Virus record (IMG/VR): IMGVR_UViG_3300005529_000001
Location: 62,001 to 126,000 of that record
DNA length: 64,000 bases
Reading direction: 5' to 3' (one strand)
How positions within the stretch are numbered: the first letter of the stretch is position 1; each line of letters opens with the position of its first letter. The notes beneath the pieces are model-generated. The model worked only from the letters and a program-made list of their open reading frames with translations, had not been told where the DNA came from and made no database searches. Positions 2,274-23,645 of the stretch are shown here, in pieces. Made by a program: the position numbers and the translations under genes.

Positions 2274-2305
2274 GGGTACATCCTACCACAGGGCGCGCCA
2301 GACTT

Positions 2306-2638
2306 TCACCGGTAACGGGGCCCCAGCACGAACAGGGTCTCGAAGCCATCGTGAGAGACCTGTTCGAACGGAAACAGGCTGGGCACGTCGCCCCAACGGG
2401 TGCTGTCGTTGTGCCACAGCTGGACGCCACGCCTTGACTCGACCCACCAGTTGTGAGGAGAGGCACCCATCCAGCGATGGAGGGGTTGCCCTGCCCTGAG
2501 GGCCCTGAGGGCCCAGGGACCGACGTGGGCCCGGAGCTTCAGCAAGTCAAACTCGATGCCGGCGGGGGTCTGGCGCATCCGTGCCTCAGCACGGGCGAGG
2601 TCCTCCCGGAGGTGGCGGGCCCTACGTGCGGTTTCCAT
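2306..2638 (-). CDS. hypothetical protein
   Basis: ORF; TGA stop lies in the next -35 box. Confidence 0.65.
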   Translation of the reverse strand: METARRARHLREDLARAEARMRQTPAGIEFDLLKLRAHVGPWALRALRAGQPLHRWMGASPHNWWVESRRGVQLWHNDSTRWGDVPSLFPFEQVSHDGFETLFVLGPRYR

Positions 2639-2643
2639 GTGAC

Positions 2644-2808
2644 TCACCTGTGATAGCAGAGGAGGGCGATGAGCGTCGCGGCGATGAAGGCCAGGCCGAG
2701 CGGCCACGGCCGGGCACGGACGTAGAGGGAGCTGCGCCGCGGCGAGCTCAACATGCTGCGACGCCGCGCGGTCCCGTCAGGGAGGACCTGCTTGAAGGAG
2801 TGACCCAT
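2644..2808 (-). CDS. 54-aa membrane peptide
   Basis: not in ORF track; own promoter GTGAAA..TACAGT; C-terminal hydrophobic segment. Confidence 0.55.
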   Translation of the reverse strand: MGHSFKQVLPDGTARRRSMLSSPRRSSLYVRARPWPLGLAFIAATLIALLCYHR

Positions 2809-3068
2809 GGGAGCACTGTAACACGGGGGCGGCGCACCGTTTCACTGCCGGGGCTGACCGCGGTGTGGCGCATCACCAGGGGGACCAAATTCGAGCGTGA
2901 AATGTCCCGGGATTTTTGTGTGCGATCTAAGCGGGGGCCTCCCCGGCAATGGCCTGCAAAGGTTGCCAGGGGGCCGGGGGGCCATGGGGCCCGCTCGACC
3001 CCATCTTGGGGCCAGGCCCCTAGGCCTTCTGTGGGCCTTCTACGGGGCCCCCTGCCGCCCCGGCCCGT

Positions 3069-3296
3069 TCAACCGTGATCGCGGACAGCTCTGACGAACG
3101 CGCCCGGCACCAGGTCGACGTTGACCCAGTTGGCGCGCTGGCACGTCGGGCAGCGCCAGGTGATCGCGTCGCCGTCGCGGCAGTCGGGCTCGAGCCTGCA
3201 ATCGCTGGGCTCCAGCTCGACGACTGCCTCGCAGGTGCTGTCCTGGCACGTCTGCTGGATCGCTCCCGCTTGCTTCCCTGCCATGATGATCTTCAT
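3069..3296 (-). CDS. Zn-ribbon protein
   Basis: CxxxxC...CPTC; cassette promoter. Confidence 0.7.
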   Translation of the reverse strand: MKIIMAGKQAGAIQQTCQDSTCEAVVELEPSDCRLEPDCRDGDAITWRCPTCQRANWVNVDLVPGAFVRAVRDHG

Positions 3297-3329
3297 GAAA
3301 TTGACTCTACACCCGTTCTTCCATCGGGT

Positions 3330-3536
3330 TCACTCGCCAGCGACGAAGTACGTCGGTTGCCCGGCGAGCCAACGCAGCAGCGTCAGCCACAGCGACTCCC
3401 TGACGAACGTCCGCATGCATGGACGACACATCGCGAGGCTCGGGTGGATCCCCCAGGCGTGCGGTGGGAAGACAGTCTGCGACATCTGGAGCTCCGCGTC
3501 GCAGCAGGTGCAGGCGTACTTCGGGAGGGCGTCCAT
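3330..3536 (-). CDS. small Cys-motif protein
   Basis: CTCC...CRPC; TGATG coupling to 3536-3676. Confidence 0.6.
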   Translation of the reverse strand: MDALPKYACTCCDAELQMSQTVFPPHAWGIHPSLAMCRPCMRTFVRESLWLTLLRWLAGQPTYFVAGE

Positions 3537-3676
3537 CAGTGACAGCAACGCAGCGCGAGGAGGACCCCGACGCCGGCTGCGAGGTAGAAGTAACCCATCC
3601 CGACGAAGACCTCGACCGTCTTGGTCGACGGGACCCGCCGGATGTACGCGTCCCAGATGCTGTGCTGCTCGTCCAT
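3536..3676 (-). CDS. 46-aa membrane peptide
   Basis: not in ORF track; promoter ATGAAA..TAGGGT-N6-ATG. Confidence 0.55.
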   Translation of the reverse strand: MDEQHSIWDAYIRRVPSTKTVEVFVGMGYFYLAAGVGVLLALRCCH

Positions 3677-3688
3677 GAGCTGACCCTA

Positions 3689-4204
3689 TCAGGCGACGTC
3701 GGCCTCTTTCATCTGGTCCTTCCAGGCGTCCCAGTCGAAGTCGCTGTCGTCTCCCGCTGCCATGATGCGAGCCACGCTCGCCCAGCTCCCCGCAGGCGGC
3801 TGCGTCACGTCGTGGTCCTCGAACGCAGCCTTGCGAGCCTCCCGCACGTCCTCGTCAGCGTTGACCTGGGCGAGGCGCTCGGCTGACAGCGTGGTGACGG
3901 GCGCCGAGAACGCCTCTCGCTGCTTGCTGTTGGCGATGTCGCACAGCTGGCGGTGGTACTGCATCGCGATCGTCCGGGCGTTCTGGAGGTGGAAGCCCGT
4001 CAGCTGGCGGCCGCTCTTGACCCAGCGGGCGTAGTAGCTGCCCTTGCTGGCGTGGTTGCTGCGGAAGCCGACCGAGTTGTCGTGCCGCGTGTGGGAGGTC
4101 GCCTTCTCGTCGGCGGTCTGGCGCTCGTAGATCGCCACGATGGCACGCTCGACCGCGCGGGGATTCGTCTGGAGCATCTGCTGGATCCGCTCTTTGTTCC
4201 ACAT
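3689..4204 (-). CDS. conserved phage hypothetical protein (MWNKERIQQML...)
   Basis: true start set by TATACT-N6-ATG; the 417-aa track ORF is an upstream overrun. Confidence 0.8.
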   Translation of the reverse strand: MWNKERIQQMLQTNPRAVERAIVAIYERQTADEKATSHTRHDNSVGFRSNHASKGSYYARWVKSGRQLTGFHLQNARTIAMQYHRQLCDIANSKQREAFSAPVTTLSAERLAQVNADEDVREARKAAFEDHDVTQPPAGSWASVARIMAAGDDSDFDWDAWKDQMKEADVA

Positions 4205-4281
4205 GAGCCCAGTATAACACGCGTCGCCCGAGACCTTCACAGTCCCGAGCGATTCGTTGCTATTTTGTCCGGATGGGCCCG

Positions 4282-4545
4282 TTACCGCAGCATCGACGGG
4301 AAGACCCACGAGGAGACTTCCAGGGCGTACCCCAGGGCGTCGACCTCGTGGGGCTTGGAGGTGTCGTGGGGGCCCTTGAAGGCCACCCCGACGCGGATCA
4401 CCGAGTCTTTCCCGACCTCGACCGCAAGGACCTTGCACGGCTGGTGCTGGCGGGGGCGGTGGGCGTCCGCCGCGACGATGTCCTTGAGCTCGTAGACGCT
4501 GCCGACGACGAGCTCGCACTGGCCGAAGAGTTTGGACCTTGACAT
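4282..4545 (-). CDS. hypothetical protein
   Basis: cassette promoter + ORF. Confidence 0.75.
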   Translation of the reverse strand: MSRSKLFGQCELVVGSVYELKDIVAADAHRPRQHQPCKVLAVEVGKDSVIRVGVAFKGPHDTSKPHEVDALGYALEVSSWVFPSMLR

Positions 4546-4577
4546 GGGTCGACTCTACCAGGATCTGCGATCGTCTT

Positions 4578-4772
4578 TCACCCATTGTCCGGGAATGGAT
4601 GGTAGTTGGTGGGGACGCGTCCCCTGTCGTCGACGGCGTTGAGCGCCTCGACGAGGGCGGTGATGGCTGGGTTCGACATGCCGTCGGTGTTGATGCCGTC
4701 GTTGTCCTCGACCCGACGGATGAAGGTCTGTAGCTCCTGCAGCTGAGCGTGAGTGAAGGTGATGGTTGCCAT
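4578..4772 (-). CDS. hypothetical protein
   Basis: cassette promoter + ORF. Confidence 0.75.
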   Translation of the reverse strand: MATITFTHAQLQELQTFIRRVEDNDGINTDGMSNPAITALVEALNAVDDRGRVPTNYHPFPDNG

Positions 4773-4802
4773 GATGGCAACCTACCACTTTCGTCCGTGA
4801 CC

Positions 4803-5105
4803 TTACACCGGGAGGCGGTCGTTGTAGGTGATGCTGTCCGCCTCATGGAGCGTCCAGTAGAGGTCCCAGTCGGCGTCCTCCAGGTTACGCCAGTCCTGGA
4901 TCCCCGGGTCCCAGACCGCCCATGAGATGAAGCTGATCTCATAGCAGGAGGAGAGCAACCGCGTGCCGTCGGGGGAGAGCGAGAGGGTGTGGTAGCCTTC
5001 CTCGACCTTGTTCTGTTCCTCCGATTCCATGACGTCGTCCGTCAGGCAACCGGGGAAGAGCCGCGCTGCTTGGTCCGGGGTGAGGCGCTTGAGGGTGATG
5101 TCCAT
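4803..5105 (-). CDS. acidic hypothetical protein
   Basis: cassette promoter + ORF. Confidence 0.75.
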   Translation of the reverse strand: MDITLKRLTPDQAARLFPGCLTDDVMESEEQNKVEEGYHTLSLSPDGTRLLSSCYEISFISWAVWDPGIQDWRNLEDADWDLYWTLHEADSITYNDRLPV

Positions 5106-5164
5106 GACAGCATCCTAACACGCGCGTGCCCGACCTTTCACAGATCGGGCACGAGTTTTGTTGG

Positions 5165-5344
5165 TCAGTGGTTGTCGTTGGTCCGGACCCCGATGTACGG
5201 TCCCCAGTCGTCTTGGTACTCGGAACGTGGGATGAGTTCGATGTCAAACGCGACGGACGGGTCGGTGTCCATGGACAGTTCCTTGTCACCGTGACCCTCG
5301 GACACGAGGGCGTCAACCATCTCCTTCAGGTCGTTCAGTGTCAT
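5165..5344 (-). CDS. 59-aa acidic protein, GC-dinucleotide-depleted gene
   Basis: not in ORF track; MTLNDLKEMVDALVSEGHGD...; own promoter; only 2 GC dinucleotides, both Ala codons. Confidence 0.75.
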   Translation of the reverse strand: MTLNDLKEMVDALVSEGHGDKELSMDTDPSVAFDIELIPRSEYQDDWGPYIGVRTNDNH

Positions 5345-5618
5345 GAACCGAATCTACCACGAGTCGTTGCCTGTTTTCACCGAAAGACGCGCGGACCTGT
5401 CGCACCCAGTCCTGGGCATCGTAGAGACCGGCTTGCGCAGCGAGCCCATCGAGCTCATCAAGCTGGTCCTGGAGTGACTTCTGCGACTGCGGCTTGGTCC
5501 CCATCAGCTTCCTCCGGCGCTTTTCTCGACGGTCACCGAGCCGTTCGAGGGAGAGCCCTATCACGAAGATGGCAACGAACATGACGATAACGCCGTGGAA
5601 GAAGCACGTCTCGTCCAT
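5313..5618 (-). CDS. membrane-anchored hypothetical protein
   Basis: cassette promoter; N-terminal TM segment. Confidence 0.65.
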   Translation of the reverse strand: MDETCFFHGVIVMFVAIFVIGLSLERLGDRREKRRRKLMGTKPQSQKSLQDQLDELDGLAAQAGLYDAQDWVRQVRASFGENRQRLVVDSVHDTERPEGDG

Positions 5619-5650
5619 GTCCCGATCCTACCTCAGCTCATCAGCGACTT

Positions 5651-5842
5651 TCACCCGAGACGTGCTTCGACGACCTTGCTCTGGACGACAACGCAGCTGA
5701 CGCGGTCAGCGACGCTGTCTGCGGGCCAGCCGAGCATCGGCTCGCCGTCGACCGAGACGAGCCGGAAGATCATGTTCTTTGCTTCGGCGAGGTTCTGGGC
5801 GCCCTTCTTGCTGAGGCCGATGAAGTCGGCTGCGCCGCTCAT
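5651..5842 (-). CDS. hypothetical protein
   Basis: ATGA-coupled to 5839-6036; stop in next -35 box. Confidence 0.7.
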   Translation of the reverse strand: MSGAADFIGLSKKGAQNLAEAKNMIFRLVSVDGEPMLGWPADSVADRVSCVVVQSKVVEARLG

Positions 5843-6036
5843 CGCGGGCCCGCCCGGAGACCCGCGGCCTCCTGGATGTCGAGGCGCATCAGCCTGCACT
5901 CGTCTGCCGCAGTCACCAGCGCGTCTTGTTGGAGCTTGACCTGCGACGTCAGCTGCTCGATCTTGTCAGCTGCGTCGTTGTGGTTGAAGAGGCGGAGCTC
6001 TGCGATGAGCTGCTCGGTGGTCTTGCGCTTTGCCAT
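5839..6036 (-). CDS. hypothetical coiled-coil protein
   Basis: cassette promoter + ORF. Confidence 0.7.
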   Translation of the reverse strand: MAKRKTTEQLIAELRLFNHNDAADKIEQLTSQVKLQQDALVTAADECRLMRLDIQEAAGLRAGPR

Positions 6037-6119
6037 GGTCTCACTCTACCTGGATCTGCGGGTGATTTTCACCGAGCACCCGCGTCGGGGACACATCCAA
6101 CCCGTCTTGAGCCTGATCT

Positions 6120-6293
6120 TCATCGGTCGTCTCCACGCAGACGATACCCGTCCGCTCTGAGCGTTGCCTCGACGAGGCGTGAGCGCGGTGTCTCGAACGA
6201 GAACACGAAGCCCTGGGCTTCACGGACCTCCCGCTCGGCGATCGTCTCGAGCATCGTCTTCTTGTTGTCAACGGCGAGCGGGGAGCGCGGCAT
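6120..6293 (-). CDS. 57-aa hypothetical protein
   Basis: not in ORF track; TAGAGT-N6-ATG promoter. Confidence 0.6.
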   Translation of the reverse strand: MPRSPLAVDNKKTMLETIAEREVREAQGFVFSFETPRSRLVEATLRADGYRLRGDDR

Positions 6294-6308
6294 GTCCAGA
6301 CTCTACCC

Positions 6309-6545
6309 TCAGTAGCACGCCTGTTTCACCGAGGCCATGAAGCCCTGGGCGAAGAGCTGCTCCTCTTTCACGTCACGTGCTCCCGCTTCGGCCTTGAGCA
6401 TGAAAGCGGTGGGCGAGTCACCCGGGATGCCGAAGAACTCGGTGTCCAGGAAACGGTGCCGCAACGCGGCGATGCAACGCTCGGCGTTGCGCTTCGCCTC
6501 AGCCGGGCTGAACGGGTGGTCGATCATGATGATGTCCTGCACCAT
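6309..6545 (-). CDS. hypothetical protein
   Basis: cassette promoter + ORF. Confidence 0.7.
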   Translation of the reverse strand: MVQDIIMIDHPFSPAEAKRNAERCIAALRHRFLDTEFFGIPGDSPTAFMLKAEAGARDVKEEQLFAQGFMASVKQACY

Positions 6546-6577
6546 GATCGAATCCTACCTCGTTCTCGCCTGACCTT

Positions 6578-7006
6578 TCACTGCTTCAGGCCGAAGCCCT
6601 CGGTGACACCACGTGCTCGCCGGGCAGCTGCCGTCAGGTAGACGGTGTAGACGCGGCGCTCGTGGGCCTGGTAGGTGACGTACTGCAGGTCGTCGGCGAT
6701 GCTCCAGTAGACGTCGCTCTTCACCTTGTTCTCGTCCTCGACGAAGTCGGCCTCGCACTTCTGCCCATCGCCCGTCATCGCAGCGTGGGCCTGCACCTGC
6801 TTGAGGACCCGCTTCACCTGTTTCGGGTTCACCGCCTCGTCGTCGTAGGCGTATCCGGTCTCCGCTTCTGCCTCCTTGCGGTTCTCCGCGGTGATGCAGT
6901 ACTTGCCGTTGCAGCCGCAGGCGCAGCCGGGCTTGCCGCTGTACGCCTTGATGATGTCCGAGACGGTGAGGGAAGCGAGGTGTTGCTTGGCGGTGGTAGC
7001 GTCCAT
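6578..7006 (-). CDS. hypothetical protein with YSGKPGCACGC motif
   Basis: TATAGT-N6-ATG fixes the start. Confidence 0.75.
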   Translation of the reverse strand: MDATTAKQHLASLTVSDIIKAYSGKPGCACGCNGKYCITAENRKEAEAETGYAYDDEAVNPKQVKRVLKQVQAHAAMTGDGQKCEADFVEDENKVKSDVYWSIADDLQYVTYQAHERRVYTVYLTAAARRARGVTEGFGLKQ

Positions 7007-7038
7007 GACCAAACTATACCTCGCTTCCCCGTTGACTT

Positions 7039-7335
7039 TCACCGCCACTCGCAGGTGGCCGCGCGCCCGCCGGTGTACAGGTCCTGCATCTCTCCACACA
7101 CCCAGTGACGGGTGGTCTTGGCGACCGCGTGCTGGGGGACGCTGGCGACGATGGTGAACTCGTGGACCTGGATGACCTCGGGTGCCGCCGGGATGTCGAG
7201 GCTGGTGGGAGCCTCCAGCGCCGGGACGGGAACGCTCGGGTCGGCGTGGGAGCCGGTGCCCTGCGAAGCAAGGGCGATGCCAGTGCCGAGGAAGAGACCG
7301 ATGACCGCAGCGATGAAGAAGATGTGGAATTTCAT
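7039..7335 (-). CDS. secreted/membrane protein
   Basis: signal-peptide-like N-terminus; leadered promoter with AAAGGA SD. Confidence 0.7.
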   Translation of the reverse strand: MKFHIFFIAAVIGLFLGTGIALASQGTGSHADPSVPVPALEAPTSLDIPAAPEVIQVHEFTIVASVPQHAVAKTTRHWVCGEMQDLYTGGRAATCEWR

Positions 7336-7401
7336 GGGGTGGTGTCCTTTCCGTTGATGGACTGACTCTACCTCGATCTGCGCTGATCTTTCACAGGTTC
7401 A

Positions 7402-7528
7402 GCTCGTCGCTCCCAGTTGTCACTGGGCTCGCGCCGTGGGGCACCAGGCGTACTCGCTCCCGAGCAAGGAGCTTTCGGCCCAGCGGCTCTTCCCCGCCGG
7501 GAGCGACGAGCCGAGCCCGTGAGGGCTC
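7402..7528. ncRNA. candidate structured RNA
   Basis: perfect 13-bp closing stem 7402-7414/7499-7511 with internal hairpins, plus a GAGCCC-GTGA-GGGCTC hairpin; no credible ORF. Confidence 0.4.
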
Positions 7529-7534
7529 AGGCGT

Positions 7535-7729: not shown

Positions 7730-7733
7730 GACC

Positions 7734-7829
7734 TTACTGTACCTCCTTTCCCTTCCGGCTTTCACTGATCTGCGTGAAGATGGAGACGACGCCGACACAG
7801 ATGAAGAAGAGCGCGATGCCAGGGTTCAT
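7734..7829 (-). CDS. 31-aa membrane micropeptide
   Basis: MNPGIALFFICVGVVSIFTQ...; own promoter. Confidence 0.6.
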   Translation of the reverse strand: MNPGIALFFICVGVVSIFTQISESRKGKEVQ

Positions 7830-7861
7830 GACCCCAGTCTATCCTGATCTGCGCTGACCTT

Positions 7862-18553: not shown

Positions 18554-18610
18554 GGTTTCTCTCCGGTGTAGACTGAATCTACCACGATCACCCGTGAGTT
18601 TTCACTCCCG

Positions 18611-18874
18611 TCAATCGATGTCCACGCGGATCATCGGGTTGTCAGCGTGTTTCTCGAGCCAATCCGCTGCTTTGCGCAGCTCCTTGGCAAACGCGGCAGG
18701 CGTGGATCGCCACTTCAGCTCGTGACTGGGACCGTCGTCAGCGAGATCCGCCTCGGAGTGTGGGTTTGTGCAGTCGGAGGCCCTACACTTGCAGAACCCG
18801 CCTTTCGGCGGCGGGGGTTCAGCACAGAAATACATCCCGTTGTGGGCATCGAACTCGAGCCGGCCGCGCTTCAC
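18611..18874 (-). CDS. hypothetical Cys-containing protein
   Basis: GTGA-coupled to 18871-19203. Confidence 0.6.
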   Translation of the reverse strand: MKRGRLEFDAHNGMYFCAEPPPPKGGFCKCRASDCTNPHSEADLADDGPSHELKWRSTPAAFAKELRKAADWLEKHADNPMIRVDID

Positions 18875-19203
18875 GATCCCACCGACCAGTAGTAGATCTT
18901 CTTGCGCATCCCTGTCACGTTGAAGCGCTTGCCCAGGTACTGGTCGAGGCGTTGGTAGCCCTCGACGACCGTCTCGGCGTTGCCTCGGTTCATGTCCTGT
19001 TCGAGGACGCGGATGTCTTCCTGGATGGACTCGACACTCCGGATGAGGCCGGCGACGACGTCCTTCGGACAAGCGACCTCTCGGAGGAGGTCCTTGATGT
19101 CACGCCTGGGGTCGCCGAAGCAGTTTCCGGGATTGGCAGCGTCACCGAGCATCTCTTCGAGCTCGTCGGCTTGGTTGATCGTCAGCGTGGTCTTCTTGGC
19201 CAT
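18871..19203 (-). CDS. hypothetical protein
   Basis: leadered promoter, AGGAGG SD. Confidence 0.75.
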   Translation of the reverse strand: MAKKTTLTINQADELEEMLGDAANPGNCFGDPRRDIKDLLREVACPKDVVAGLIRSVESIQEDIRVLEQDMNRGNAETVVEGYQRLDQYLGKRFNVTGMRKKIYYWSVGS

Positions 19204-19252
19204 GGGGTGGTGCCTCCTGATAGGGCGACTCTACCACAGTCGCCACGATCTT

Positions 19253-19576
19253 TCACAGCGACCAGGGAGGCGCCGCGGGCAGGCCCACGCGCGCACGCTC
19301 TGCGTCCAGCCTGGCTTTGTCCTCCCGCGCCGTCACCTCTTCGATGTCGCAGGGCACCGTGGTGAAGGTGTGATCGAACTCCGGCATGGGCGGGAAGTCC
19401 TCGTTGGCAAAGCCGAGGCGACAGATCGCCCGCTCGGTGAGGTCCATGAACCGGTCGTCCTTCGTCGTCATGGCGATGGTCATCTTGCCCTTCTGCCCAC
19501 GACGGTAGCGCTCGACAACGTCGAGCTGGACCTGGATGATCGCTGCGGCGACGAACTTGGCGATGATGTTGTCCAT
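19253..19576 (-). CDS. hypothetical protein
   Basis: cassette promoter + ORF. Confidence 0.7.
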   Translation of the reverse strand: MDNIIAKFVAAAIIQVQLDVVERYRRGQKGKMTIAMTTKDDRFMDLTERAICRLGFANEDFPPMPEFDHTFTTVPCDIEEVTAREDKARLDAERARVGLPAAPPWSL

Positions 19577-19611
19577 GAGCAGAATGTACCTCAGATCGTG
19601 ACCGAGTTACA

Positions 19612-19857
19612 CTAGATGCGGAACGAACGGACGCTCTTGACGCCGTTGCGGTCGCCGACCTTCGCCAACACCTGGATGGGTTTGGCAGCGACGGCGATGG
19701 CCTCGTACTGCCTGTAACCGTAGCCGAAAGCTGAGTGAGCGGCGTCTTCCCCGAACGTCTGCCGGAGGAAGGTGATGAGGGGCGTGTGGAACCTCGGCTC
19801 GGTGACGATGACGACAGCCATGAACCGCTTGTCGTGGAGGTCGGGTCGGGCGCTCAT
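19612..19857 (-). CDS. hypothetical protein
   Basis: ATGA-coupled to 19854-20075. Confidence 0.65.
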   Translation of the reverse strand: MSARPDLHDKRFMAVVIVTEPRFHTPLITFLRQTFGEDAAHSAFGYGYRQYEAIAVAAKPIQVLAKVGDRNGVKSVRSFRI

Positions 19858-20075
19858 GCGTAGCTGTAGGGCTTGGCGGTGACGACGATGGCCCAGCGAT
19901 CGCCCTTCTCCCAGTTGACGGTGATGCTGGTCCCGTTCGCGAGCTCGACGGTCACGTCGCCGCTCGTGGTGTCCACCTTGGTGATGGTGCCAATGTCCCC
20001 ACGTTTGCAATGGGGACAGAGCTGGAACATGATCCGTTTGCCTTCGAGCGACTTGGAGGGGAGCCTGTTTGCCAT
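19854..20075 (-). CDS. small beta-barrel protein (DUF4314-like)
   Basis: GDIGTITKVD...V.V...NG pattern; cassette promoter. Confidence 0.6.
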   Translation of the reverse strand: MANRLPSKSLEGKRIMFQLCPHCKRGDIGTITKVDTTSGDVTVELANGTSITVNWEKGDRWAIVVTAKPYSYA

Positions 20076-20107
20076 GGTCCCAGTCTACCACGCTCGCGCC
20101 GGTTCTG

Positions 20108-20359
20108 TCACTCCCAGTGGGAAGCGAGCAGCGCGTCAGTGTTGGGGAACAGGCCCTGCAACTCTTCCGGCACCTGCCCCTCGTCGCCACCACACACCAG
20201 CTCCTCGCACTCTTTCTCGGTCGGGTAGCGCTCCGCGATCTCATAGTCGAGCTGGAGCGCCTCGCTGATGTCAGCGGGCAGGATGTGGACGAGGCTGTCG
20301 CTGAACGCCCAGTGCCGGATCGACTCGGTCGCAGCGTTGATGGTCAGGGGTGTGTCCAT
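20108..20359 (-). CDS. acidic hypothetical protein
   Basis: cassette promoter + ORF. Confidence 0.75.
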   Translation of the reverse strand: MDTPLTINAATESIRHWAFSDSLVHILPADISEALQLDYEIAERYPTEKECEELVCGGDEGQVPEELQGLFPNTDALLASHWE

Positions 20360-20411
20360 GTTGCTACACTACCACGATCCCTCGCGAGCTTGCACCCGCG
20401 CCTGCGCTCTC

Positions 20412-20687
20412 TCAGAGCTCTTCGTACGTCAGTGAAGCCGGGCACGGCATCCAACCGTCGTCAATGTCGAAGAAGTACCCGGGCTGATCGGTGGGCTGAG
20501 TGTTGCCGTCGCGGACCAGGCGAGTGATGAGGCACGGCACCCAGCCGCCGGGGGTCTTCACCTCGCCCCACGGCTTGTCGGGGAACTGCATGCTGCCCAG
20601 GTCGATCTCGTCATCCATCGCCTGCGCCTCGTCGGGGTACCGCGCGGTGAACTCGCTCTCGGCCAGGCGCTTATACTTGACAGGCAT
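20412..20687 (-). CDS. hypothetical protein
   Basis: cassette promoter + ORF. Confidence 0.75.
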   Translation of the reverse strand: MPVKYKRLAESEFTARYPDEAQAMDDEIDLGSMQFPDKPWGEVKTPGGWVPCLITRLVRDGNTQPTDQPGYFFDIDDGWMPCPASLTYEEL

Positions 20688-20709
20688 GACCAGACCTTAC
20701 CACGGAACG

Positions 20710-20940
20710 CTAGCGAGTTTCACCGGGTGCCAGGCACAGGATCTCCTCGCGGTTGACACGCGCTTTCTCGCCATCGCTGACGAAGTAACCCAGGCACGCG
20801 CGGCCGATGCAGCTGGGGACGCAGCCGAAGCCGCCGGTGCACATGAAGGTGCGTTCCTCGTCAGTCCCCTTGTAGTAGCGGGGGTCGAGGATGACTTTCT
20901 TGTTGGTGAGGTCGACGCCGGGGACGCTGGTGTTCGCCAT
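20710..20940 (-). CDS. hypothetical protein (GGFGC motif)
   Basis: GGAGG SD. Confidence 0.7.
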   Translation of the reverse strand: MANTSVPGVDLTNKKVILDPRYYKGTDEERTFMCTGGFGCVPSCIGRACLGYFVSDGEKARVNREEILCLAPGETR

Positions 20941-20957
20941 CTTGGTTCCTCCAACGC

Positions 20958-20996
20958 GGAAAGCCCGGACCCCCGTCTCAAGGGATCCGGGCCCTC
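20958..20996 (-). terminator. terminator-like hairpin
   Basis: GGGCCCGGATCCC-loop-GGGGGTCCGGGC-TTT. Confidence 0.55.
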
Positions 20997-21010
20997 CGGG
21001 TGGGAAGCCG

Positions 21011-21394
21011 TCAGCGACCGATGCCGAGGAGCGAGGCGATGCGCCCGTCCTTGAGCGCCTCCAGCTCCTTGGCCAGGATGGTGTCCATCTTGGCGCGGTC
21101 CATGCCGAGGTCGAGGCCGTGGCGCTTGCACAGGCTGTCGAGGAGGCCGCCGAGCTCGTGAGCCGTCGACTCCGTCGGGGTCATCTCCCGGTACACCGGG
21201 TCGACGATGAAGTGACCGTGCTCGACGTCGGGGTTCGAGTCGAGGAAGGCCGCCAGGCGCCGGAAGCAGTCACCGCGGGGGACGGGCTTGGGCGCGACGC
21301 TGGTGGTGAAGTTGTTGCCGTTGGCATCGGTGTCGACGAAGTACTCGCCGATCTCATTGATGACGACGTAGCCGGTGATCTCGTTGGTCTTCAT
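21011..21394 (-). CDS. hypothetical protein (MKTNEITG...), nested in frame in 21011-21835
   Basis: own promoter GTGCAA-N18-TATACT and GGAGG SD. Confidence 0.7.
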   Translation of the reverse strand: MKTNEITGYVVINEIGEYFVDTDANGNNFTTSVAPKPVPRGDCFRRLAAFLDSNPDVEHGHFIVDPVYREMTPTESTAHELGGLLDSLCKRHGLDLGMDRAKMDTILAKELEALKDGRIASLLGIGR

Positions 21395-21835
21395 GGGGTG
21401 GTTGCCTCCAGTGGAACCAGTATAACCCGGTTCGCTCGTGTCTTGCACCCGCGCTTGCGCTTCCTGGTTCAGGACGCCCTTGAGGCTGCGCCAGACGCCG
21501 CTGTCGTCACCGAAGCAGGAGAACACCATCCAGCTGCCCTCGGCGGTCAGCAGGTAGGCGTAGTCAACAGGACCCGCACCGATGTCGTCTTCGTAGTCCT
21601 GGACGCAGTCGACGATCACGCTGGGATCAGCGCAACCAGCGAGGGGCTTGGGACTGTAGGGCGGCACCAGGCTGACACAGCGCATGTCCCCGAAGTCAGC
21701 GACCCTCGCCGCCTGCTCGGAACTCATGCAGAGGAGCAGCTTGCCGACAGAGCGGGGGAAACCGTCGCTGTGGCAGTACGAGTAGGTGACCATGCCGTTG
21801 GGCGCTTCGACACCGATGTAACAGTGGGTTGACAT
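21011..21835 (-). CDS. phage protein (MST..IG...YCH.DG motif) reading in frame into the next cassette
   Basis: cassette promoter; no stop before 21394. Confidence 0.6.
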   Translation of the reverse strand: MSTHCYIGVEAPNGMVTYSYCHSDGFPRSVGKLLLCMSSEQAARVADFGDMRCVSLVPPYSPKPLAGCADPSVIVDCVQDYEDDIGAGPVDYAYLLTAEGSWMVFSCFGDDSGVWRSLKGVLNQEAQARVQDTSEPGYTGSTGGNHPMKTNEITGYVVINEIGEYFVDTDANGNNFTTSVAPKPVPRGDCFRRLAAFLDSNPDVEHGHFIVDPVYREMTPTESTAHELGGLLDSLCKRHGLDLGMDRAKMDTILAKELEALKDGRIASLLGIGR

Positions 21836-21844
21836 GGTCCTAGT

Positions 21845-22132
21845 CTACCACGAACGTGGCAGTCCTTTCACTCTGGCGCGGCTGATCCTCGGGTGGTGCC
21901 AGGGCCTGTTGTGGTGGGGGACATCGTTCCGGTGCCAGAGCCCATCGGAGCCCTTGAAACAATACGTCTCCAGCAGGCCGAGGTAGCCCAGGTTGGTGCC
22001 CCAGTAGGCCCTGCACCGCATCGGCTCGCCCGGGTGGCTCATCTCCCACAGGGCACGCTGGATGTCGGTGTACCGCATCCCGCCACGGTCAGCGATCAGG
22101 TCGAGGACCCTGACGGACTTTGACTGCAGCAT
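21845..22132 (-). CDS. hypothetical protein (possible winged helix)
   Basis: cassette promoter + ORF. Confidence 0.65.
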   Translation of the reverse strand: MLQSKSVRVLDLIADRGGMRYTDIQRALWEMSHPGEPMRCRAYWGTNLGYLGLLETYCFKGSDGLWHRNDVPHHNRPWHHPRISRARVKGLPRSW

Positions 22133-22211
22133 GGTCCCAACCTACCACAAAAAGGATCGCGGGTGCACACCCGCGCCCGCGCCCACGCAATGGCTCATCG
22201 ATGAACCCACA

Positions 22212-22241
22212 GTGCAACCAAGAGTTCATCGATGGTACACT
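22212..22241 (+). promoter_or_regulatory. cassette promoter with no downstream ATG
   Basis: GTGCAA-N18-TACACT. Confidence 0.7.
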
Positions 22242-22247
22242 GGACCC

Positions 22248-22355
22248 AATCCGCTTGAAGCTGGCCTGGAGAGCGAGCCCTGGTCCGGGAGGACGGCGGG
22301 GAGCCACGCAGCCTGCCCAACGGTTGGGCTCCCCAGAAAGCGCTGCCCGTCCACA
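22248..22355 (+). ncRNA. candidate small RNA
   Basis: between two promoters; GGACGG/CCGTCC and GGGGAGCC/GGCTCCCC stems, alternative GCCCAA/TTGGGC hairpin. Confidence 0.45.
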
Positions 22356-22428
22356 CCGTCTGTGCAACCCCCGGTGCTTTCCTGGTAGACTGGGACCATC
22401 AACGCTCCACCACCCCGGAGGAAACACA

Positions 22429-23250
22429 ATGGCTGGCATGAACCTGAAGGTGGCCCGAGGCTTCGCCCTCGGCACCCGCCGATCGACCATCAAGGTCCCA
22501 CCCGAGCTCCGCGTCAAGCACTCGACCGGCATGGACTGGCTCGACGACGTGCTGGGCAGCGAGGGCGGTGTCACCGCCTCGTCTGTCATCATGCTGACGG
22601 GCGGTCCCGGCTGCGGCAAGAGCACCCTGATCCGGCAGCTGGCCAACTCGATGGCCCGCGACGGCTCGACGCTGCTCCCCATCTACAACTGCGGCGAGGA
22701 GAGCCTGTTCCAGGCTGAGCTCGCCAACGAGCGGCTGCAGGTCACCAACGACTTCATGGTCGGTGAGGAGACGGAGCTGCCCAAGCTGCTGACCTTCGCC
22801 GACAACGTGAGGAAGGCCAACCCGAAGAAGGTCGTCACCATCCTGCAAGACAGCCTCCAGACCCTGAACGACATGAAGTACAAGGACGGCGGCACCACGG
22901 GCAACACCCCGGTCCGCTGCGCCGAGGCGCTGGTCAGCTGGTCGCAGGAGAAGGTGGGCAACTTCGGCCACGTCTGGTTCGTCGGCCAGGTGACGAAGGG
23001 CGGCGAGTTCGCCGGCAAGAACGTCATCAAGCACGCGATTGACGTCCACATGCACCTGTTCTACGACGAGGACAAGAAGTCGGCGACCTACGGCATGCTG
23101 CTGGGCGAGGTCCAGAAGAACCGCTGGGGTTGCAACGGCAAGACCTACATCCTCGGCCTGACCAAGACGGGCATCGAGGAGCGCGGCTCCTTCACCAAGG
23201 GCCAGGACTTCGACGTCGACGGCAAGGAAGACGAGGGGGAGGCTGCCTGA
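22429..23250 (+). CDS. RadA/Sms-like RecA-family ATPase (ATPase domain only)
   Basis: Walker A GGPGCGKST, GEES, DSLQT, GQVTKGGEFAG, KNRWG; own promoter and GGAGG SD. Confidence 0.85.
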   Translation: MAGMNLKVARGFALGTRRSTIKVPPELRVKHSTGMDWLDDVLGSEGGVTASSVIMLTGGPGCGKSTLIRQLANSMARDGSTLLPIYNCGEESLFQAELANERLQVTNDFMVGEETELPKLLTFADNVRKANPKKVVTILQDSLQTLNDMKYKDGGTTGNTPVRCAEALVSWSQEKVGNFGHVWFVGQVTKGGEFAGKNVIKHAIDVHMHLFYDEDKKSATYGMLLGEVQKNRWGCNGKTYILGLTKTGIEERGSFTKGQDFDVDGKEDEGEAA

Positions 23251-23510
23251 TGATCAGCATCGTGCAAGTCCAAGCAGCGACTCCTCCCTACGAAGAGGTC
23301 CACGTGCGGATGTCCCGCGCCGAGGCCGTCGCCCTGTTCCACGACCTCAACCGGGTCATGGCGATCCTCGACGACGCTCGCGCGAACGAGGACGACGGCA
23401 TGGTCGGGGACATGGACGGCGCTGACCAAGCCGCCTACGATCACGCCAACGACTTCCTGGCTCTCATCCAGCGCGAGCTGCAGATCGACCCGGAAGATCC
23501 CAGGGACTGA
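23250..23510 (+). CDS. acidic hypothetical protein
   Basis: TGATG coupling to the ATPase gene. Confidence 0.7.
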   Translation: MISIVQVQAATPPYEEVHVRMSRAEAVALFHDLNRVMAILDDARANEDDGMVGDMDGADQAAYDHANDFLALIQRELQIDPEDPRD

Positions 23511-23523
23511 GCACAGACCACTG

Positions 23524-23595
23524 GGCGCATGCGTGGGGGGGCTGGACGAGCCAGGGGTGGTGATGACAGCCCCCCCACGCATGCGCCGCTTTTTT
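23524..23595 (+). terminator. intrinsic terminator with a 21-bp perfect stem
   Basis: GGCGCATGCGTGGGGGGGCTG / CAGCCCCCCCACGCATGCGCC then GCTTTTTT. Confidence 0.8.
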
Positions 23596-23645
23596 CGTCA
23601 CCCGGCTGTGAAAGTCGCTGGTGACTTGTGGTAATTTGGTGGCCC

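What the first reader, a model, noticed from the sequence alone, without database searches (positions are those of the whole stretch)
2274..23645. About 50 one-gene cassettes with leaderless promoters whose -35 box doubles as the upstream stop codon
Seen in sequence: GTG(A/C)AA-N17/18-TAnnnT-N6-ATG precedes nearly every gene here (about 53 copies by manual count, against about 6 in the remaining 40 kb). About 40 put the ATG at the expected +1 with no SD, which implies leaderless mRNA. The TGA within GTGAAA often terminates the previous gene, fixing the intergenic gap at 32 nt (2273/2306, 4545/4578, 5618/5651, 6545/6578, 7006/7039, 7829/7862, 8116/8149, 8403/8436, 8690/8723, 9141/9174, 10199/10232, 20075/20108). 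Inference: one 36-bp element supplies stop, promoter and start, so any ORF between two copies is a self-contained, shuffleable unit. This recalls PeSL elements of T4-type phages and the SPO1 host-takeover module. The array could also act as an RNA-polymerase sink.
Basis: partly seen in the sequence, partly recalled or inferred. Interest (0 to 1): 0.78.

Follow-up and report, generated by a model that had tools for sequence, protein, structure and literature searches.

The report
Leaderless promoter array in jumbo phage
A 24-kb stretch of an uncultured 369-kb soil phage holds about 60 tiny genes of unknown function, most with their own promoter placed so that the RNA should begin at the start codon; the elements are real and are packed far more tightly than the comparable early-gene regions of T4-type phages.

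Summary
A matrix scan finds 49 copies of GTGAAA-N18-(TG)nTAnnnT in window 1-24000, where under one is expected by chance. In 41 copies an ATG sits 6-7 nt after the -10 box, with C at -1. Seven copies instead have an 11-23 nt leader with a GGAGG ribosome site, so the motif is a promoter and not a ribosome site. All downstream ORFs show strong coding signal (GC3 about 0.85) and almost none has a known family.

The TGA inside GTGAAA ends the upstream gene in 18 of 49 copies.

The genome is a complete 369-kb metagenomic myovirus with T4-type portal and capsid genes. The same promoter type (GTGNAA) runs through a large uncultured clade.

A 114-kb relative shares only about 20 of about 60 cassette genes. 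One shared gene has moved together with its promoter. Near-identical strains in mine metagenomes lack two whole cassettes, and one edge of that gap lies 1 nt from a -35 box.

The closest known analogue is the PeSL element of T4-type phages, but stem-loop, AT-rich tract and Shine-Dalgarno site are missing. I class it as a new, leaderless, compacted variant. Start sites and host are unverified.

The parts
1..24000 (-). Dense array: 49 promoters and about 60 small genes (27-274 aa, median 93) transcribed leftwards. Two short plus-strand interruptions lie near 12.3-13.0 kb and 22.1-23.9 kb.
   Evidence: independent gene calls agree
26..64 (-). Promoter plus leaderless ATG (28); the gene runs off the window's left end (170 aa)
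   Evidence: -35 GTGAAA, spacer 18, -10 TAGGAT, N6
2271..2309 (-). Promoter plus leaderless ATG 2273 (72 aa). The TGA of the -35 box is the stop of upstream gene 2707-2306.
   Evidence: GTGAAA/18/TAGGAT
2806..2845 (-). Promoter plus leaderless ATG 2808 (54 aa)
   Evidence: GTGAAA/19/TACAGT
3294..3333 (-). Promoter plus leaderless ATG 3296 (75 aa, N7). The TGA of the -35 box is the upstream stop.
   Evidence: GTGAAC/18/TAGAGT
3674..3712 (-). Promoter plus leaderless ATG 3676 (46 aa); the promoter lies inside the 3' end of gene 4204-3689
   Evidence: ATGAAA/18/TAGGGT
4202..4240 (-). Promoter plus leaderless ATG 4204 (171 aa, phrog_21015). This cassette sits elsewhere in relative G001 and moved with its promoter.
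   Evidence: GTGAAG/18/TATACT
4543..4581 (-). Promoter plus leaderless ATG 4545 (87 aa). The TGA of the -35 box is the stop of gene 4772-4578. The strain-level gap ends 1 nt upstream of this -35 box.
   Evidence: GTGAAA/18/TAGAGT
4583..5160 (-). 578-nt segment holding two whole cassettes (5105-4803 and 4772-4578, each with its promoter). It is absent from strains in runs X3 and X4, where 36 unrelated nt stand in its place. It is present in X2 and in the reference.
   Evidence: joint 4582/5161, flanks identical, no shared letters
4770..4808 (-). Promoter plus leaderless ATG 4772 (64 aa). The TAA inside GTGTAA is the stop of gene 5105-4803.
   Evidence: GTGTAA/18/TAGGTT
5103..5141 (-). Promoter plus leaderless ATG 5105 (100 aa); an 11-bp hairpin brackets the -35 box
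   Evidence: GTGAAA/18/TAGGAT
5342..5380 (-). Promoter plus leaderless ATG 5344 (59 aa); the promoter lies inside the 3' end of gene 5618-5313
   Evidence: GTGAAA/18/TAGATT
5616..5654 (-). Promoter plus leaderless ATG 5618 (101 aa). The TGA of the -35 box is the upstream stop.
   Evidence: GTGAAA/18/TAGGAT
6034..6072 (-). Promoter plus leaderless ATG 6036 (65 aa)
   Evidence: GTGAAA/18/TAGAGT
6291..6329 (-). Promoter plus leaderless ATG 6293 (57 aa)
   Evidence: GTGAAA/18/TAGAGT
6543..6581 (-). Promoter plus leaderless ATG 6545 (78 aa). The TGA of the -35 box is the upstream stop.
   Evidence: GTGAAA/18/TAGGAT
7004..7042 (-). Promoter plus leaderless ATG 7006 (142 aa). The TGA of the -35 box is the upstream stop.
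   Evidence: GTGAAA/18/TATAGT
7333..7394 (-). Promoter with a 23-nt leader, a ribosome site and ATG 7335 (98 aa)
   Evidence: GTGAAA/18/TAGAGT
7727..7765 (-). Promoter plus leaderless ATG 7729 (64 aa)
   Evidence: GTGAAA/18/TACAGT
7827..7865 (-). Promoter plus leaderless ATG 7829 (31 aa). The TGA of the -35 box is the upstream stop.
   Evidence: GTGAAA/18/TAGACT
8114..8152 (-). Promoter plus leaderless ATG 8116 (84 aa). The TGA of the -35 box is the upstream stop.
   Evidence: GTGAAA/18/TAGGAT
8401..8439 (-). Promoter plus leaderless ATG 8403 (84 aa). The TGA of the -35 box is the upstream stop.
   Evidence: GTGAAA/18/TAGACT
8688..8726 (-). Promoter plus leaderless ATG 8690 (84 aa). The TGA of the -35 box is the upstream stop.
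   Evidence: GTGAAA/18/TAGAGT
9139..9177 (-). Promoter plus leaderless ATG 9141 (73 aa). The TGA of the -35 box is the upstream stop.
   Evidence: GTGAAA/18/TAGAGT
9255..9293 (-). Promoter plus leaderless ATG 9257 (27 aa, hydrophobic); a 7-bp hairpin brackets the -35 box
   Evidence: GTGAAA/18/TAGAGT
9615..9655 (-). Promoter plus leaderless ATG 9617 (111 aa, N7)
   Evidence: GTGCAA/19/TAGGAT
9845..9897 (-). Promoter with a short leader and GGAGG before the start at 9850/9847 (64 aa). The TGA of the -35 box is the upstream stop.
   Evidence: GTGAAA/18/TATAAC
10197..10235 (-). Promoter plus leaderless ATG 10199 (101 aa). The TGA of the -35 box is the upstream stop.
   Evidence: GTGAAA/18/TAGACT
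10943..10981 (-). Promoter plus leaderless ATG 10945 (237 aa)
   Evidence: GTGCAA/18/TAGACT
11816..11869 (-). Promoter with a leader before gene 11818-11069 (249 aa; relatives in 9 viral contigs)
   Evidence: GTGAAA/18/TAAAGT
13065..13103 (-). Promoter plus leaderless ATG 13067 (45 aa); a 12-bp hairpin lies around the -35 box
   Evidence: GTGAAT/18/TAGGGT
13469..13508 (-). Promoter plus leaderless ATG 13471 (111 aa, N7)
   Evidence: GTGCAA/18/TATGAT
13730..13768 (-). Promoter plus leaderless ATG 13732 (56 aa)
   Evidence: GTGAAA/18/TAGAGT
14267..14305 (-). Promoter plus leaderless ATG 14269 (166 aa)
   Evidence: ATGCAA/18/TAGGTT
14735..14773 (-). Promoter plus leaderless ATG 14737 (84 aa)
   Evidence: GTGAAA/18/TAGACT
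15502..15541 (-). Promoter plus leaderless ATG 15504 (112 aa, N7)
   Evidence: GTGCAA/18/TAGACT
16038..16075 (-). Promoter plus leaderless ATG 16040 (48 aa). The TGA of the -35 box is the upstream stop.
   Evidence: GTGAAA/17/TAGATT
16303..16340 (-). Promoter plus leaderless ATG 16305 (77 aa). The TGA of the -35 box is the upstream stop.
   Evidence: GTGAAA/17/TAGGAT
16730..16768 (-). Promoter plus leaderless ATG 16732 (131 aa); an 11-bp hairpin brackets the -35 box
   Evidence: GTGAAA/18/TACATT
17434..17483 (-). Promoter with a 12-nt leader (GGAGG) and ATG 17436 (215 aa). The TGA of the -35 box is the upstream stop.
   Evidence: GTGAAA/17/TAGACT
17792..17830 (-). Promoter plus leaderless ATG 17794 (104 aa)
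   Evidence: GTGTAA/18/TACACT
18551..18605 (-). Promoter with a 16-nt leader and ATG 18553 (166 aa); the G001 orthologue is leaderless
   Evidence: GTGAAA/18/TAGATT
19201..19256 (-). Promoter with an 18-nt leader (GGAGG) and ATG 19203 (110 aa). The TGA of the -35 box is the upstream stop.
   Evidence: GTGAAA/17/TAGAGT
19574..19612 (-). Promoter plus leaderless ATG 19576 (107 aa); this cassette is absent from G001
   Evidence: GTGTAA/18/TACATT
20073..20111 (-). Promoter plus leaderless ATG 20075 (73 aa). The TGA of the -35 box is the upstream stop.
   Evidence: GTGACA/18/TAGACT
20357..20395 (-). Promoter plus leaderless ATG 20359 (83 aa)
   Evidence: GTGCAA/18/TAGTGT
20685..20723 (-). Promoter plus leaderless ATG 20687 (91 aa)
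   Evidence: GTGAAA/18/TAAGGT
21392..21448 (-). Promoter with an 18-nt leader (GGAGG) and ATG 21394. It lies in frame inside the 274-aa ORF 21835-21011, and neither of its boxes contains a stop codon.
   Evidence: GTGCAA/18/TATACT
21833..21871 (-). Promoter plus leaderless ATG 21835 (274 aa). The TAG of the -10 box is the stop of gene 22132-21845.
   Evidence: GTGAAA/18/TAGACT
22130..22168 (-). Promoter plus leaderless ATG 22132 (95 aa)
   Evidence: GTGCAC/18/TAGGTT
23948..23977 (-). Weak promoter-like site with no gene behind it (doubtful)
   Evidence: 15.2 bits
12359..12397 (+). Plus-strand copy of the same element with a leaderless ATG at 12395
23608..23648 (+).

Best explanation
The region is the hyperplastic, probably early-expressed, part of an uncultured 369-kb myovirus with T4-type portal and capsid genes. 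It holds about 60 small genes of unknown function.

**How each gene is expressed (inferred from geometry).** Forty-eight genes have their own sigma-70-family promoter: -35 GTGNAA, 18-nt spacer, TG-extended -10 TAnnnT. In 41 of them the A of the ATG sits where transcription should start, giving an mRNA with no leader and no Shine-Dalgarno site.

**Why one promoter per gene (inferred).** A ribosome can only use such a start codon when it is at the 5' end of the RNA. No terminators separate the genes. So every gene that lacks a ribosome site needs its own promoter. This explains the density of about 2 promoters per kb.

**Why the stop codon sits in the -35 box.** Selection for compactness pushed upstream genes against the next promoter, so the TGA (or TAA) inside the -35 hexamer often serves as their stop codon. 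The overlap is shown; the selective cause is inferred.

**Which polymerase (inferred).** The promoters are most likely read by host RNA polymerase with the host's primary sigma factor. The phage's own sigma gene lies behind a promoter of the same family and lacks the -35-reading helix.

**Turnover.** Gene content changes gene by gene. Promoter plus ORF behaves as the unit that is gained, lost or moved. This is shown for one relocation and one two-cassette strain difference. Whether the repeated promoters themselves act as recombination sites is not shown.
For: - **Motif counts and significance:**
- **Start-site geometry:** canonical -10-to-ATG distance, and C at -1 in 34 of 35 seeds.
- **Same motif at variable distance from GGAGG-led starts:** 7 copies.
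- **Genes without a promoter:** they use GGAGG sites or 4-8 nt stop/start overlaps.
- **Coding signal:** GC3 0.66-0.95 in every leaderless ORF, against GC2 of about 0.45. Independent gene calls give the same gene set.
- **No terminators:** no excess of T-tract terminators (14 found, 11.3 expected). No general excess of secondary structure at the elements (P = 0.17).
- **Gene content:** 57 proteins, with no Pfam family at the curated threshold (one marginal hit, E 7e-4), 5 PHROGs of unknown function and no paralogues.
- **Phage identity:** T4-type portal, Gp23 capsid and tail sheath.
- **Clade-wide promoter type:**
- **Cassette turnover and relocation against G001:**
- **Two-cassette strain difference abutting a -35 box:**
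- **Stop-in-(-35) enrichment:** 18 of 26 in G000 and 18 of 21 GTGTAA cases in relatives.
- **Sigma gene:** truncated, and lying downstream of a family promoter.
- **Known host-level precedent:** TANNNT 6-7 nt before ORFs gives leaderless mRNA in Deinococcus-Thermus (PMC12340547).
Against: - No transcript 5' ends were obtained; the one read-laying run went on DNA runs.
- The host is unknown. No WhiB was found, and the nearest cellular relatives of the phage's methionine aminopeptidase are scattered over many phyla.
- The -35 GTGNAA departs from TTGACA and is conserved in relatives whose GC content ranges from 35 to 61%. This could point to a phage-specified recognition factor rather than the host sigma.
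- 'Early' timing is inferred only from position and gene type.
- The one strain-level joint has 36 nt of filler and no shared letters. It is therefore not a homologous exchange between promoters.
- Adjacent promoters are not clearly more alike than distant ones (P = 0.22 in G000).
- G001 is so diverged (50-60% amino-acid identity) that nucleotide breakpoints cannot be resolved.
Confidence: 0.7

Rival explanations
1. The architecture is the same, but the promoters are read by a phage-specified factor and not by the host's primary sigma. The candidate is the phage's RpoD-like sigma, which lacks the region-4.2 recognition helix, working together with the separately encoded 95-aa region-4.2-like protein. 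On this view the array is a middle class, or a self-contained phage class.
For: - The -35 GTGNAA is unlike TTGACA, yet it is conserved in clade members of 35-61% GC.
- Every relative examined keeps the truncated sigma.
- The small region-4 protein is kept in 4 of 5 large relatives.
Against: - The sigma gene has no promoter of its own and lies downstream of a promoter of this same family. The family must therefore fire before phage sigma exists, unless the protein is injected.
- The region-4 protein is encoded among late-looking genes at 304 kb, behind a different promoter-like sequence (TTGAAC-N18-TACATT plus leader).
- ORFan-rich arrays of this kind are early regions in T4-type phages (PMC2839356).
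Confidence: 0.2
2. The elements are ordinary densely packed promoters and have no role in gene mobility. Cassette gain, loss and movement come from ordinary illegitimate recombination. Only junctions at gene boundaries survive, and here every gene boundary is occupied by a promoter.
For: - The strain-level joint has 36 nt of filler and no microhomology.
- There is no significant local similarity among neighbouring promoters in G000.
- Intergenic space is 32 nt and is wholly filled by the promoter.
- There are no paralogous cassettes.
Against: - One edge of the joint falls within 1 nt of the -35 hexamer.
- A relocated gene carries its promoter, and homology stops 2 nt beyond the -35 box.
- Nearly identical promoters (30 of 31 nt) precede unrelated genes in G000 and G001 (7364-7394 against G001 98343-98373).
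- In T4-type phages, recombination between such repeats is documented (PMC2839356, PMC4122927).
Confidence: 0.4
3. The conserved block is not a promoter. It is a translation or RNA-processing signal on a long polycistronic RNA. For example, the TAGGAT-type hexamer could act as a weak ribosome site 6 nt before the ATG, and GUGAAA could be a hairpin loop or cleavage site.
For: - TAGGAT contains AGGA at a workable distance from the ATG.
- GUGA and GAAA are GNRA-type loops, and 9 of 49 copies have a stem of 7 bp or more bracketing the hexamer, against 6.7% of controls (P = 0.005).
Against: - The invariant positions are T1, A2 and T6 of the hexamer plus an upstream TG, which is the -10 signature. 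Hexamers such as TACACT, TAGACT and TATAGT carry no ribosome-site core.
- In 7 copies the motif lies 11-23 nt upstream of a separate GGAGG site.
- The 17-19 nt spacing to the second box is a promoter property.
- Hairpins are absent from about 80% of copies, and overall folding energy equals that of controls.
Confidence: 0.05

Closest known systems
PeSL (promoter-early stem-loop) elements in hyperplastic regions of T4-type phages (Arbiol et al. 2010, PMC2839356; Comeau et al. 2014, PMC4122927)
   Same: - Repeated sigma-70-type promoters, about 50 per genome, are concentrated in variable regions directly upstream of small ORFans.
- The phage has T4-type core genes.
- Related genomes differ by gain, loss, replacement and relocation of promoter-plus-ORF units.
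- The upstream stop codon is part of the element.
   Different: - Most copies have no stem-loop, and there is no AT-rich tract.
- There is no Shine-Dalgarno site or leader in 41 of 49 copies.
- The element is about 36-39 bp rather than about 100 bp.
- The stop codon lies inside the -35 hexamer, not upstream of it.
- The -35 box is GTGNAA, not TTGACA.
- Recombination between copies and mini-circles have not been shown here.
Leaderless '-10 box next to the ORF' expression in Deinococcus-Thermus (PMC12340547). The same mode in Actinobacteria is from my own knowledge of Cortes et al. 2013 and Shell et al. 2015; the latter is cited in PMC8244752.
   Same: TANNNT lies 6-7 nt before the start codon. 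GGAG-type ribosome sites are used for the other genes. TACACT, TAGACT and similar hexamers occur.
   Different: In those bacteria it is a scattered cellular mode of expression. Here it is a phage array with about 2 promoters per kb, a strongly conserved -35 box, and stop codons overlapping the promoter.
Thermus phage phiYS40, whose middle and late transcripts are largely leaderless (Sevostyanova et al. 2007, J Mol Biol 366:420). The reference is listed in PMC12340547; its content is from my own knowledge, and the paper could not be opened.
   Same: A large myovirus that expresses many genes from leaderless mRNAs driven by -10-proximal promoters.
   Different: As I recall, the leaderless phiYS40 classes lack a -35 box and are middle/late. 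No dense one-gene cassette array and no stop codon inside a -35 box is described there.
SPO1 host-takeover module (Stewart et al. 1998, Virology; from my own knowledge, not checked here)
   Same: A cluster of small early genes of unknown function with many strong promoters.
   Different: The SPO1 genes have strong ribosome sites, are grouped in operons and lie in the terminal redundancy. Here the end repeat is only 110 bp and the genes are leaderless.
Integron gene cassettes
   Same: Arrays of single small ORFs that differ between relatives.
   Different: Integron cassettes lack promoters and are bounded by attC hairpin sites used by an integrase. Here each unit has a promoter, no hairpin site is general, and no cassette protein matched an integrase family.

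Membership tests
PeSL elements of T4-type phages | Repeated sigma-70-like -35/-10 promoter motif concentrated in variable regions upstream of ORFans | tested here: met
   There are 49 copies in 24 kb against about 0.4 per kb in the neighbouring 62 kb. The downstream genes have no known family. The -35 box is GTGNAA rather than TTGACA.
PeSL elements of T4-type phages | A stable stem-loop (terminator/attenuator) as a constituent of the element | tested here: not met
   Folding energy from -70 to -11 equals that of controls (P = 0.17), and 6 of 49 copies fall below the controls' 5th percentile. Stems of 7 bp or more around the -35 box occur in 9 of 49 copies. T-tract terminators are not enriched.
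PeSL elements of T4-type phages | AT-rich tract upstream of the -35 box that holds the upstream stop codon | tested here: not met
   The positions upstream of the -35 box are G+C-rich and unconserved. The stop codon lies inside the hexamer in 19 of 49 copies.
PeSL elements of T4-type phages | Shine-Dalgarno site and start codon at the 3' end of the element | tested here: not met
   In 41 of 49 copies the ATG lies 6-7 nt after the -10 box with no ribosome site. Only 7 copies have a GGAGG leader.
PeSL elements of T4-type phages | Insertions, deletions and replacements between close relatives whose end points lie in the elements, by recombination between copies | tested here: inconclusive
   One strain-level two-cassette difference has an edge 1 nt from a -35 box, but it carries 36 nt of filler and no shared letters. 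One relocated cassette has homology ending 2 nt beyond its -35 box. G001 is too diverged for nucleotide-level breakpoints.
PeSL elements of T4-type phages | Excised promoter-plus-ORF mini-circles | not testable with these tools
   This needs PCR or long reads from phage DNA.
Leaderless promoters (-10 box adjacent to the ORF) | TANNNT hexamer 6-7 nt upstream of the start codon, with no ribosome site | tested here: met
   There are 37 copies with N6 and 4 with N7. T1, A2 and T6 are invariant, and C stands at -1.
Leaderless promoters (-10 box adjacent to the ORF) | The primary 5' end of the mRNA is at the start codon | not testable with these tools
T4-type myoviruses | Homologues of the gp20 portal, gp23 capsid and tail sheath proteins | tested here: met
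   Portal_T4 scores 1e-75, Gp23 scores 6e-78, and there is a weak match to the sheath C-terminal domain. Only distant relatives exist in GenBank phages: the best full-length capsid match (95% of the query) is 34% identical, and partial matches reach 50% to an uncultured phage.
Integron cassette array | Promoterless cassettes bounded by attC hairpin sites next to an integrase | tested here: not met
   Each unit has its own promoter. No general hairpin is present. The 57 cassette proteins gave no integrase family.

The most novel reading that the evidence does not exclude
The GTGNAA-N18-TGnTAnnnT-N6-ATG element would be a clade-specific, phage-defined minimal expression module that depends on neither the host's -35 preference nor its Shine-Dalgarno pairing. 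It would be read by a split sigma factor: the conserved RpoD-like protein that lacks region 4.2, plus the separate 95-aa region-4.2 protein. Its mRNAs would be translated in leaderless mode. Its embedded stop codon would let any ORF be dropped between two copies, so that the 36-bp unit is both the expression signal and the recombination substrate that builds these arrays.
Probability: 0.12. Interest if true: 0.85.

Novelty: new variant of a known kind. Interest (0 to 1): 0.6.

Why it matters
**Minimal gene-expression signal.** If the start sites are confirmed, this would be about the most compact arrangement I know of for a bacterial virus. About 36 bp would supply the previous gene's stop, a full two-box promoter and the next gene's start. 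The unit is repeated about 50 times in 24 kb.

**A rule for the layout.** Leaderless translation forces one promoter per gene. This gives a simple explanation for such arrays.

**Wider reach of the PeSL idea.** Promoter-bounded ORFan cassettes would extend from cultured T4-type phages to a large uncultured clade of soil and freshwater jumbo phages. In that clade the sigma factor query alone matched 331 stretches of viral contigs.

**Practical uses.**
- The motif lets start codons of tiny phage genes be called precisely.
- It marks a pool of about 60 unknown proteins that probably act on the host or against its defences.
- It gives a short portable promoter to test in hosts that translate leaderless mRNA well.

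Tried and rejected
- **Tandem gene duplication as the origin of the array: rejected.** All-against-all BLASTP finds no paralogues among the cassette proteins. The three consecutive 84-aa genes are unrelated, with z-scores below 1.2.
- **A stem-loop as a general component: rejected**.
- **Close relatives in GenBank phages:** none found by megablast.
- **Host from WhiB:** no WhiB present.
- **Host from the methionine aminopeptidase:** its nearest relatives are spread over Bdellovibrionota, Syntrophales, Proteobacteria, Firmicutes and others. No signal.
- **A second phage sigma at genome 48-49 kb:** the weak match lies in an aminotransferase-like protein.
- **A phage Dam methylase to explain the fixed GATC in spacers:** none of the D12 class.
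- **The 36-nt filler of the strain variant:** no significant match elsewhere in G000 or G001.
- **More strain variants through exact-protein look-up:** only the source sample turned up.
- **A late-promoter motif (ATACTTA):** seen before three structural genes but not enriched genome-wide.
- **Local homogenisation of neighbouring promoters:** not significant in G000.
- **The phiYS40 paper:** could not be opened.

Full report
**Observation.** The motif lies on the minus strand.

I built two position-weight blocks from the hits: the -35 hexamer with its flanks, and the six bases before the -10 box plus the hexamer itself. I allowed spacers of 17-19 nt. This gives 49 sites at 12 bits or more on the minus strand of window 1-24000. 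Shuffled sequence gives about 10 sites for a whole 369-kb strand.

The consensus is GTGAAA, an 18-nt spacer whose last bases are usually TGG (an extended -10), TAGRNT, then 6 nt ending in C, then ATG. An ATG follows the -10 box at 6 nt in 37 copies and at 7 nt in 4 (P about 1e-54). With a sigma-70-type polymerase that places +1 on the A of the ATG, with the preferred C at -1.

Seven copies are followed by an 11-23 nt leader that contains GGAGG or a near variant, 5-9 nt before the start codon. One copy has no gene. The rest of the window has four full copies. The whole genome has about 85, of which 66 lie on the minus strand of genome 0-88 kb.

**Are the ORFs real?** Every leaderless ORF has GC3 of 0.66-0.95 against GC2 of about 0.45. 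Gene calls made independently by two public pipelines give the same series of small genes.

Genes in the array that lack their own promoter either have a GGAGG site or overlap the previous stop by 4-8 nt. So the translation system in play does use Shine-Dalgarno pairing for internal starts. This makes the absence of any such site before 41 promoter-proximal ATGs meaningful.

The 57 proteins have no Pfam family at the curated threshold (one marginal hit, E 7e-4). Five match PHROGs of unknown function. They are not paralogues of one another.

**Where it sits.**
- The window is bases 62001-126000 of a 369,475-bp IMG/VR record with a 110-bp end repeat, rated complete, from a soil metagenome.
- The genome encodes a T4-type portal, a Gp23-type capsid protein, a sheath-like protein, a DnaE-type polymerase and a class II ribonucleotide reductase.
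- It has no close relative among GenBank phages.
- It encodes an RpoD/RpoS-like sigma factor, whose homologues matched 331 stretches of IMG/VR contigs.
- Loci around those sigma genes, from phages of 35-61% GC, carry the same promoter architecture on the same strand, usually with a leaderless ATG. The -35 box there reads GTGCAA, GTGTAA or GTGAAA.
- The element is therefore a clade trait. GTGAAA is the variant favoured in this genome's dense array: 32 of 49 copies against 16 of 41 elsewhere in the genome (P = 0.02, with some scoring bias).

**Stop codon in the -35 box.** In 18 of 49 copies the upstream gene ends on the TGA of GTGAAA, which gives the fixed 32-nt gap. One further gene ends on the TAA of GTGTAA. 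Two or three end on the TAG of a TAGNNT -10 box.

Of the 26 upstream ORFs that reach the hexamer at all, 18 stop in it. One third would be expected from reading frame alone (P = 2e-4). The same holds in G001 (8 of 13). In more distant relatives, frames ending on the TAA of GTGTAA account for 18 of the 21 that reach it. Where the hexamer is GTGCAA, stops are scattered through the spacer and the -10 box. The overlap is therefore a recurrent, selected outcome of compaction and not an accident of one genome.

A counter-example shows what the embedded stops do. The promoter at 21448-21419 has GTGCAA and TATACT, so neither box contains a stop codon. The upstream ORF reads straight through it into the next gene, making a 274-aa fusion frame. 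The G001 orthologue is just the 130-aa downstream part.

**Is the unit mobile?** Three lines of evidence bear on this.

*First, the 114-kb relative G001* (IMGVR_UViG_3300035696_000017). It has the same array, with 54 promoters on one strand in 60 kb. The 62 kb upstream is collinear, with 50-90% amino-acid identity. In the array only about 20 of about 60 genes are shared and the rest are unique to one phage or the other. Two shared genes sit in different places.
- For one of them (ATG 4204) the nucleotide match runs from the last base of the stop codon to 38 nt upstream of the ATG in both genomes. That is through the promoter and 2 nt beyond the -35 box.
- Spacers of orthologous genes are slightly more alike than those of unrelated pairs (0.49 against 0.41, P = 0.03). 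The 12 nt upstream of the -35 box are not more alike.
- Orthologues can differ in mode: three genes are GGAGG-led here and leaderless in G001.

*Second, near-identical strains in four mine metagenomes*. Contigs from two runs skip window 4583-5160 and carry 36 unrelated nt in its place. Both flanks show no differences. A third run has the reference form.
- The skipped 578 nt are exactly two cassettes with their promoters.
- The right edge lies 1 nt upstream of the -35 hexamer of the next gene. The TGA of that hexamer is the stop codon of the second skipped gene.
- The left edge lies 4 nt after the previous stop codon.
- There are no shared letters at the joint, and the filler matches nothing else. 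So this is a replacement at element boundaries, not a crossover between two promoter copies.

*Third, a caveat.* The promoter fills the whole intergenic space, so any breakpoint that leaves genes intact must lie in or beside it.

**Which polymerase form?** The phage sigma aligns with RpoD regions 2 to 4.1 and ends about 26 residues after the LRLRFGL motif. It has no region-4.2 recognition helix. The same short end is kept in 18 relatives. On its own it is a poor candidate for reading a -35 box.

Its gene has no promoter of its own and lies downstream of a promoter of this family. This argues that the family fires before phage sigma exists, that is, on host holoenzyme. Against that, the hexamer differs from TTGACA and is conserved across phages of very different base composition.

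A separate 95-aa protein with a region-4 helix-turn-helix is kept in 4 of 5 large relatives. I give the phage-factor reading 0.2.

**Mechanism proposed.**
- *Shown:* the sequence anatomy, its statistics, its conservation across the clade, and the gene-by-gene turnover.
- *Inferred:* each element starts an mRNA at the A of the AUG. Ribosomes load on the 5'-terminal AUG. No terminators separate the genes, so RNAs run on and form a nested set. Downstream ATGs on those RNAs have no ribosome site and depend on their own promoters. This would explain why there is one promoter per gene.
- *Known precedent:* the TANNNT-N6/7-ORF arrangement is an established leaderless mode in Deinococcus-Thermus (PMC12340547) and, from my own knowledge, in Actinobacteria. 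By contrast, no leaderless transcripts were found in the jumbo phage phiKZ (PMC8244752), and all mapped 5' UTRs of the jumbo phage AR9 were 26 nt or longer (PMC5312081).

**Comparison with known systems.** The nearest described system is the PeSL of T4-type phages. PeSLs are about 100-bp composite elements: an AT-rich tract with the upstream stop, a sigma-70 promoter, a stem-loop, and a Shine-Dalgarno site with the start codon. About 50 occur per genome, upstream of ORFans in hyperplastic regions. They have been shown to mediate insertions, deletions and mini-circles (PMC2839356; PMC4122927).

The present elements share the role and the setting. They lack the stem-loop, the AT-rich tract and the ribosome site, and they fold the stop codon into the -35 box. 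They work like PeSLs in layout but do not meet the PeSL definition. I class them as a new variant of a known kind.

**Limits.**
- There is no RNA evidence.
- The host is unknown.
- Only one moderately close relative and one strain-level event were available.
- 'Early' timing and the RNA-polymerase-sink idea are untested.

Noticed in passing
genome 33359-34174 (minus; L002:13359-14174) and genome 304287-304574 (plus; L020:1318-1605); both outside the window: The phage's RpoD-like sigma stops about 26 residues after LRLRFGL, so it lacks the region-4.2 recognition helix. The same short end is found in 18 relatives. A separate 95-aa protein carrying a Sigma70_r4 helix-turn-helix is kept in 4 of 5 large relatives. 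This may be a split sigma factor.
   Followed up: partly
window promoters, offset +16 to +19 from the first base of the -35 box (for example 4565-4562, 8136-8133): GATC is fixed at one spacer position in 14 of 43 promoters here and in 8 of 33 in G001 (P about 1e-21). It occurs at a second position (GTGAAAGATC) in 4 and 6 more. Local runs occur: CGCAGATC at 4.5-10.3 kb and GAAAGATC at 13.7-19.3 kb. The phage has no D12-class Dam methylase. The GATC could be an operator or a methylation-sensitive site.
   Followed up: partly
window 21011-21835 (minus): A 274-aa ORF contains an in-frame internal promoter without stop codons (GTGCAA / TATACT), followed by GGAGG and ATG 21394. The G001 orthologue is only the C-terminal 130 aa and is leaderless. 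This looks like two cassettes fused by loss of the embedded stops.
   Followed up: partly
window 7862-8690 (minus): Three consecutive genes of exactly 84 aa repeat at an exact 287-nt period, yet their proteins show no detectable similarity (z below 1.2). A fourth 84-aa gene lies at 14483-14737.
   Followed up: yes
window 48284-51436 and 51519-53435 (plus): A 1050-aa protein with major-vault-protein shoulder and repeat domains (1e-28) lies next to a 638-aa SPFH/Band-7 protein. This is unusual cargo for a phage.
   Followed up: no
window 55756-56622 (plus): A phage-encoded type I methionine aminopeptidase (TIGR00500, 2e-82). Its nearest cellular homologues (50-58% identity) are scattered over many phyla.
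   Followed up: partly
window 18553 / 19203 / 21394 against G001 109498 / 110105 / 110826: Orthologous genes switch between a GGAGG-led start (here) and a leaderless start (G001). For 18553/109498 the coding identity is 93% right up to the ATG and drops to background (about 19%) upstream of it.
   Followed up: yes
genome 271867, 279059, 251074 (minus; outside the window): Upstream regions of genes next to the capsid, portal and sheath genes carry GGATACTTA or GGTACTTA about 25-35 nt before a GGAG site and the start codon. This could be a -10-only late promoter, but the heptamer is not enriched genome-wide.
   Followed up: partly
window 7364-7394 against G001 98343-98373: Promoters identical at 30 of 31 nt precede unrelated genes in the two phages.
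   Followed up: no
window 2842-2995 (minus): A 118-nt stretch (2878-2995) is 82% identical to the 5' part of a 250-aa G001 gene (97613-96861), while only a 47-aa ORF is left here. It is probably a gene remnant.
   Followed up: no
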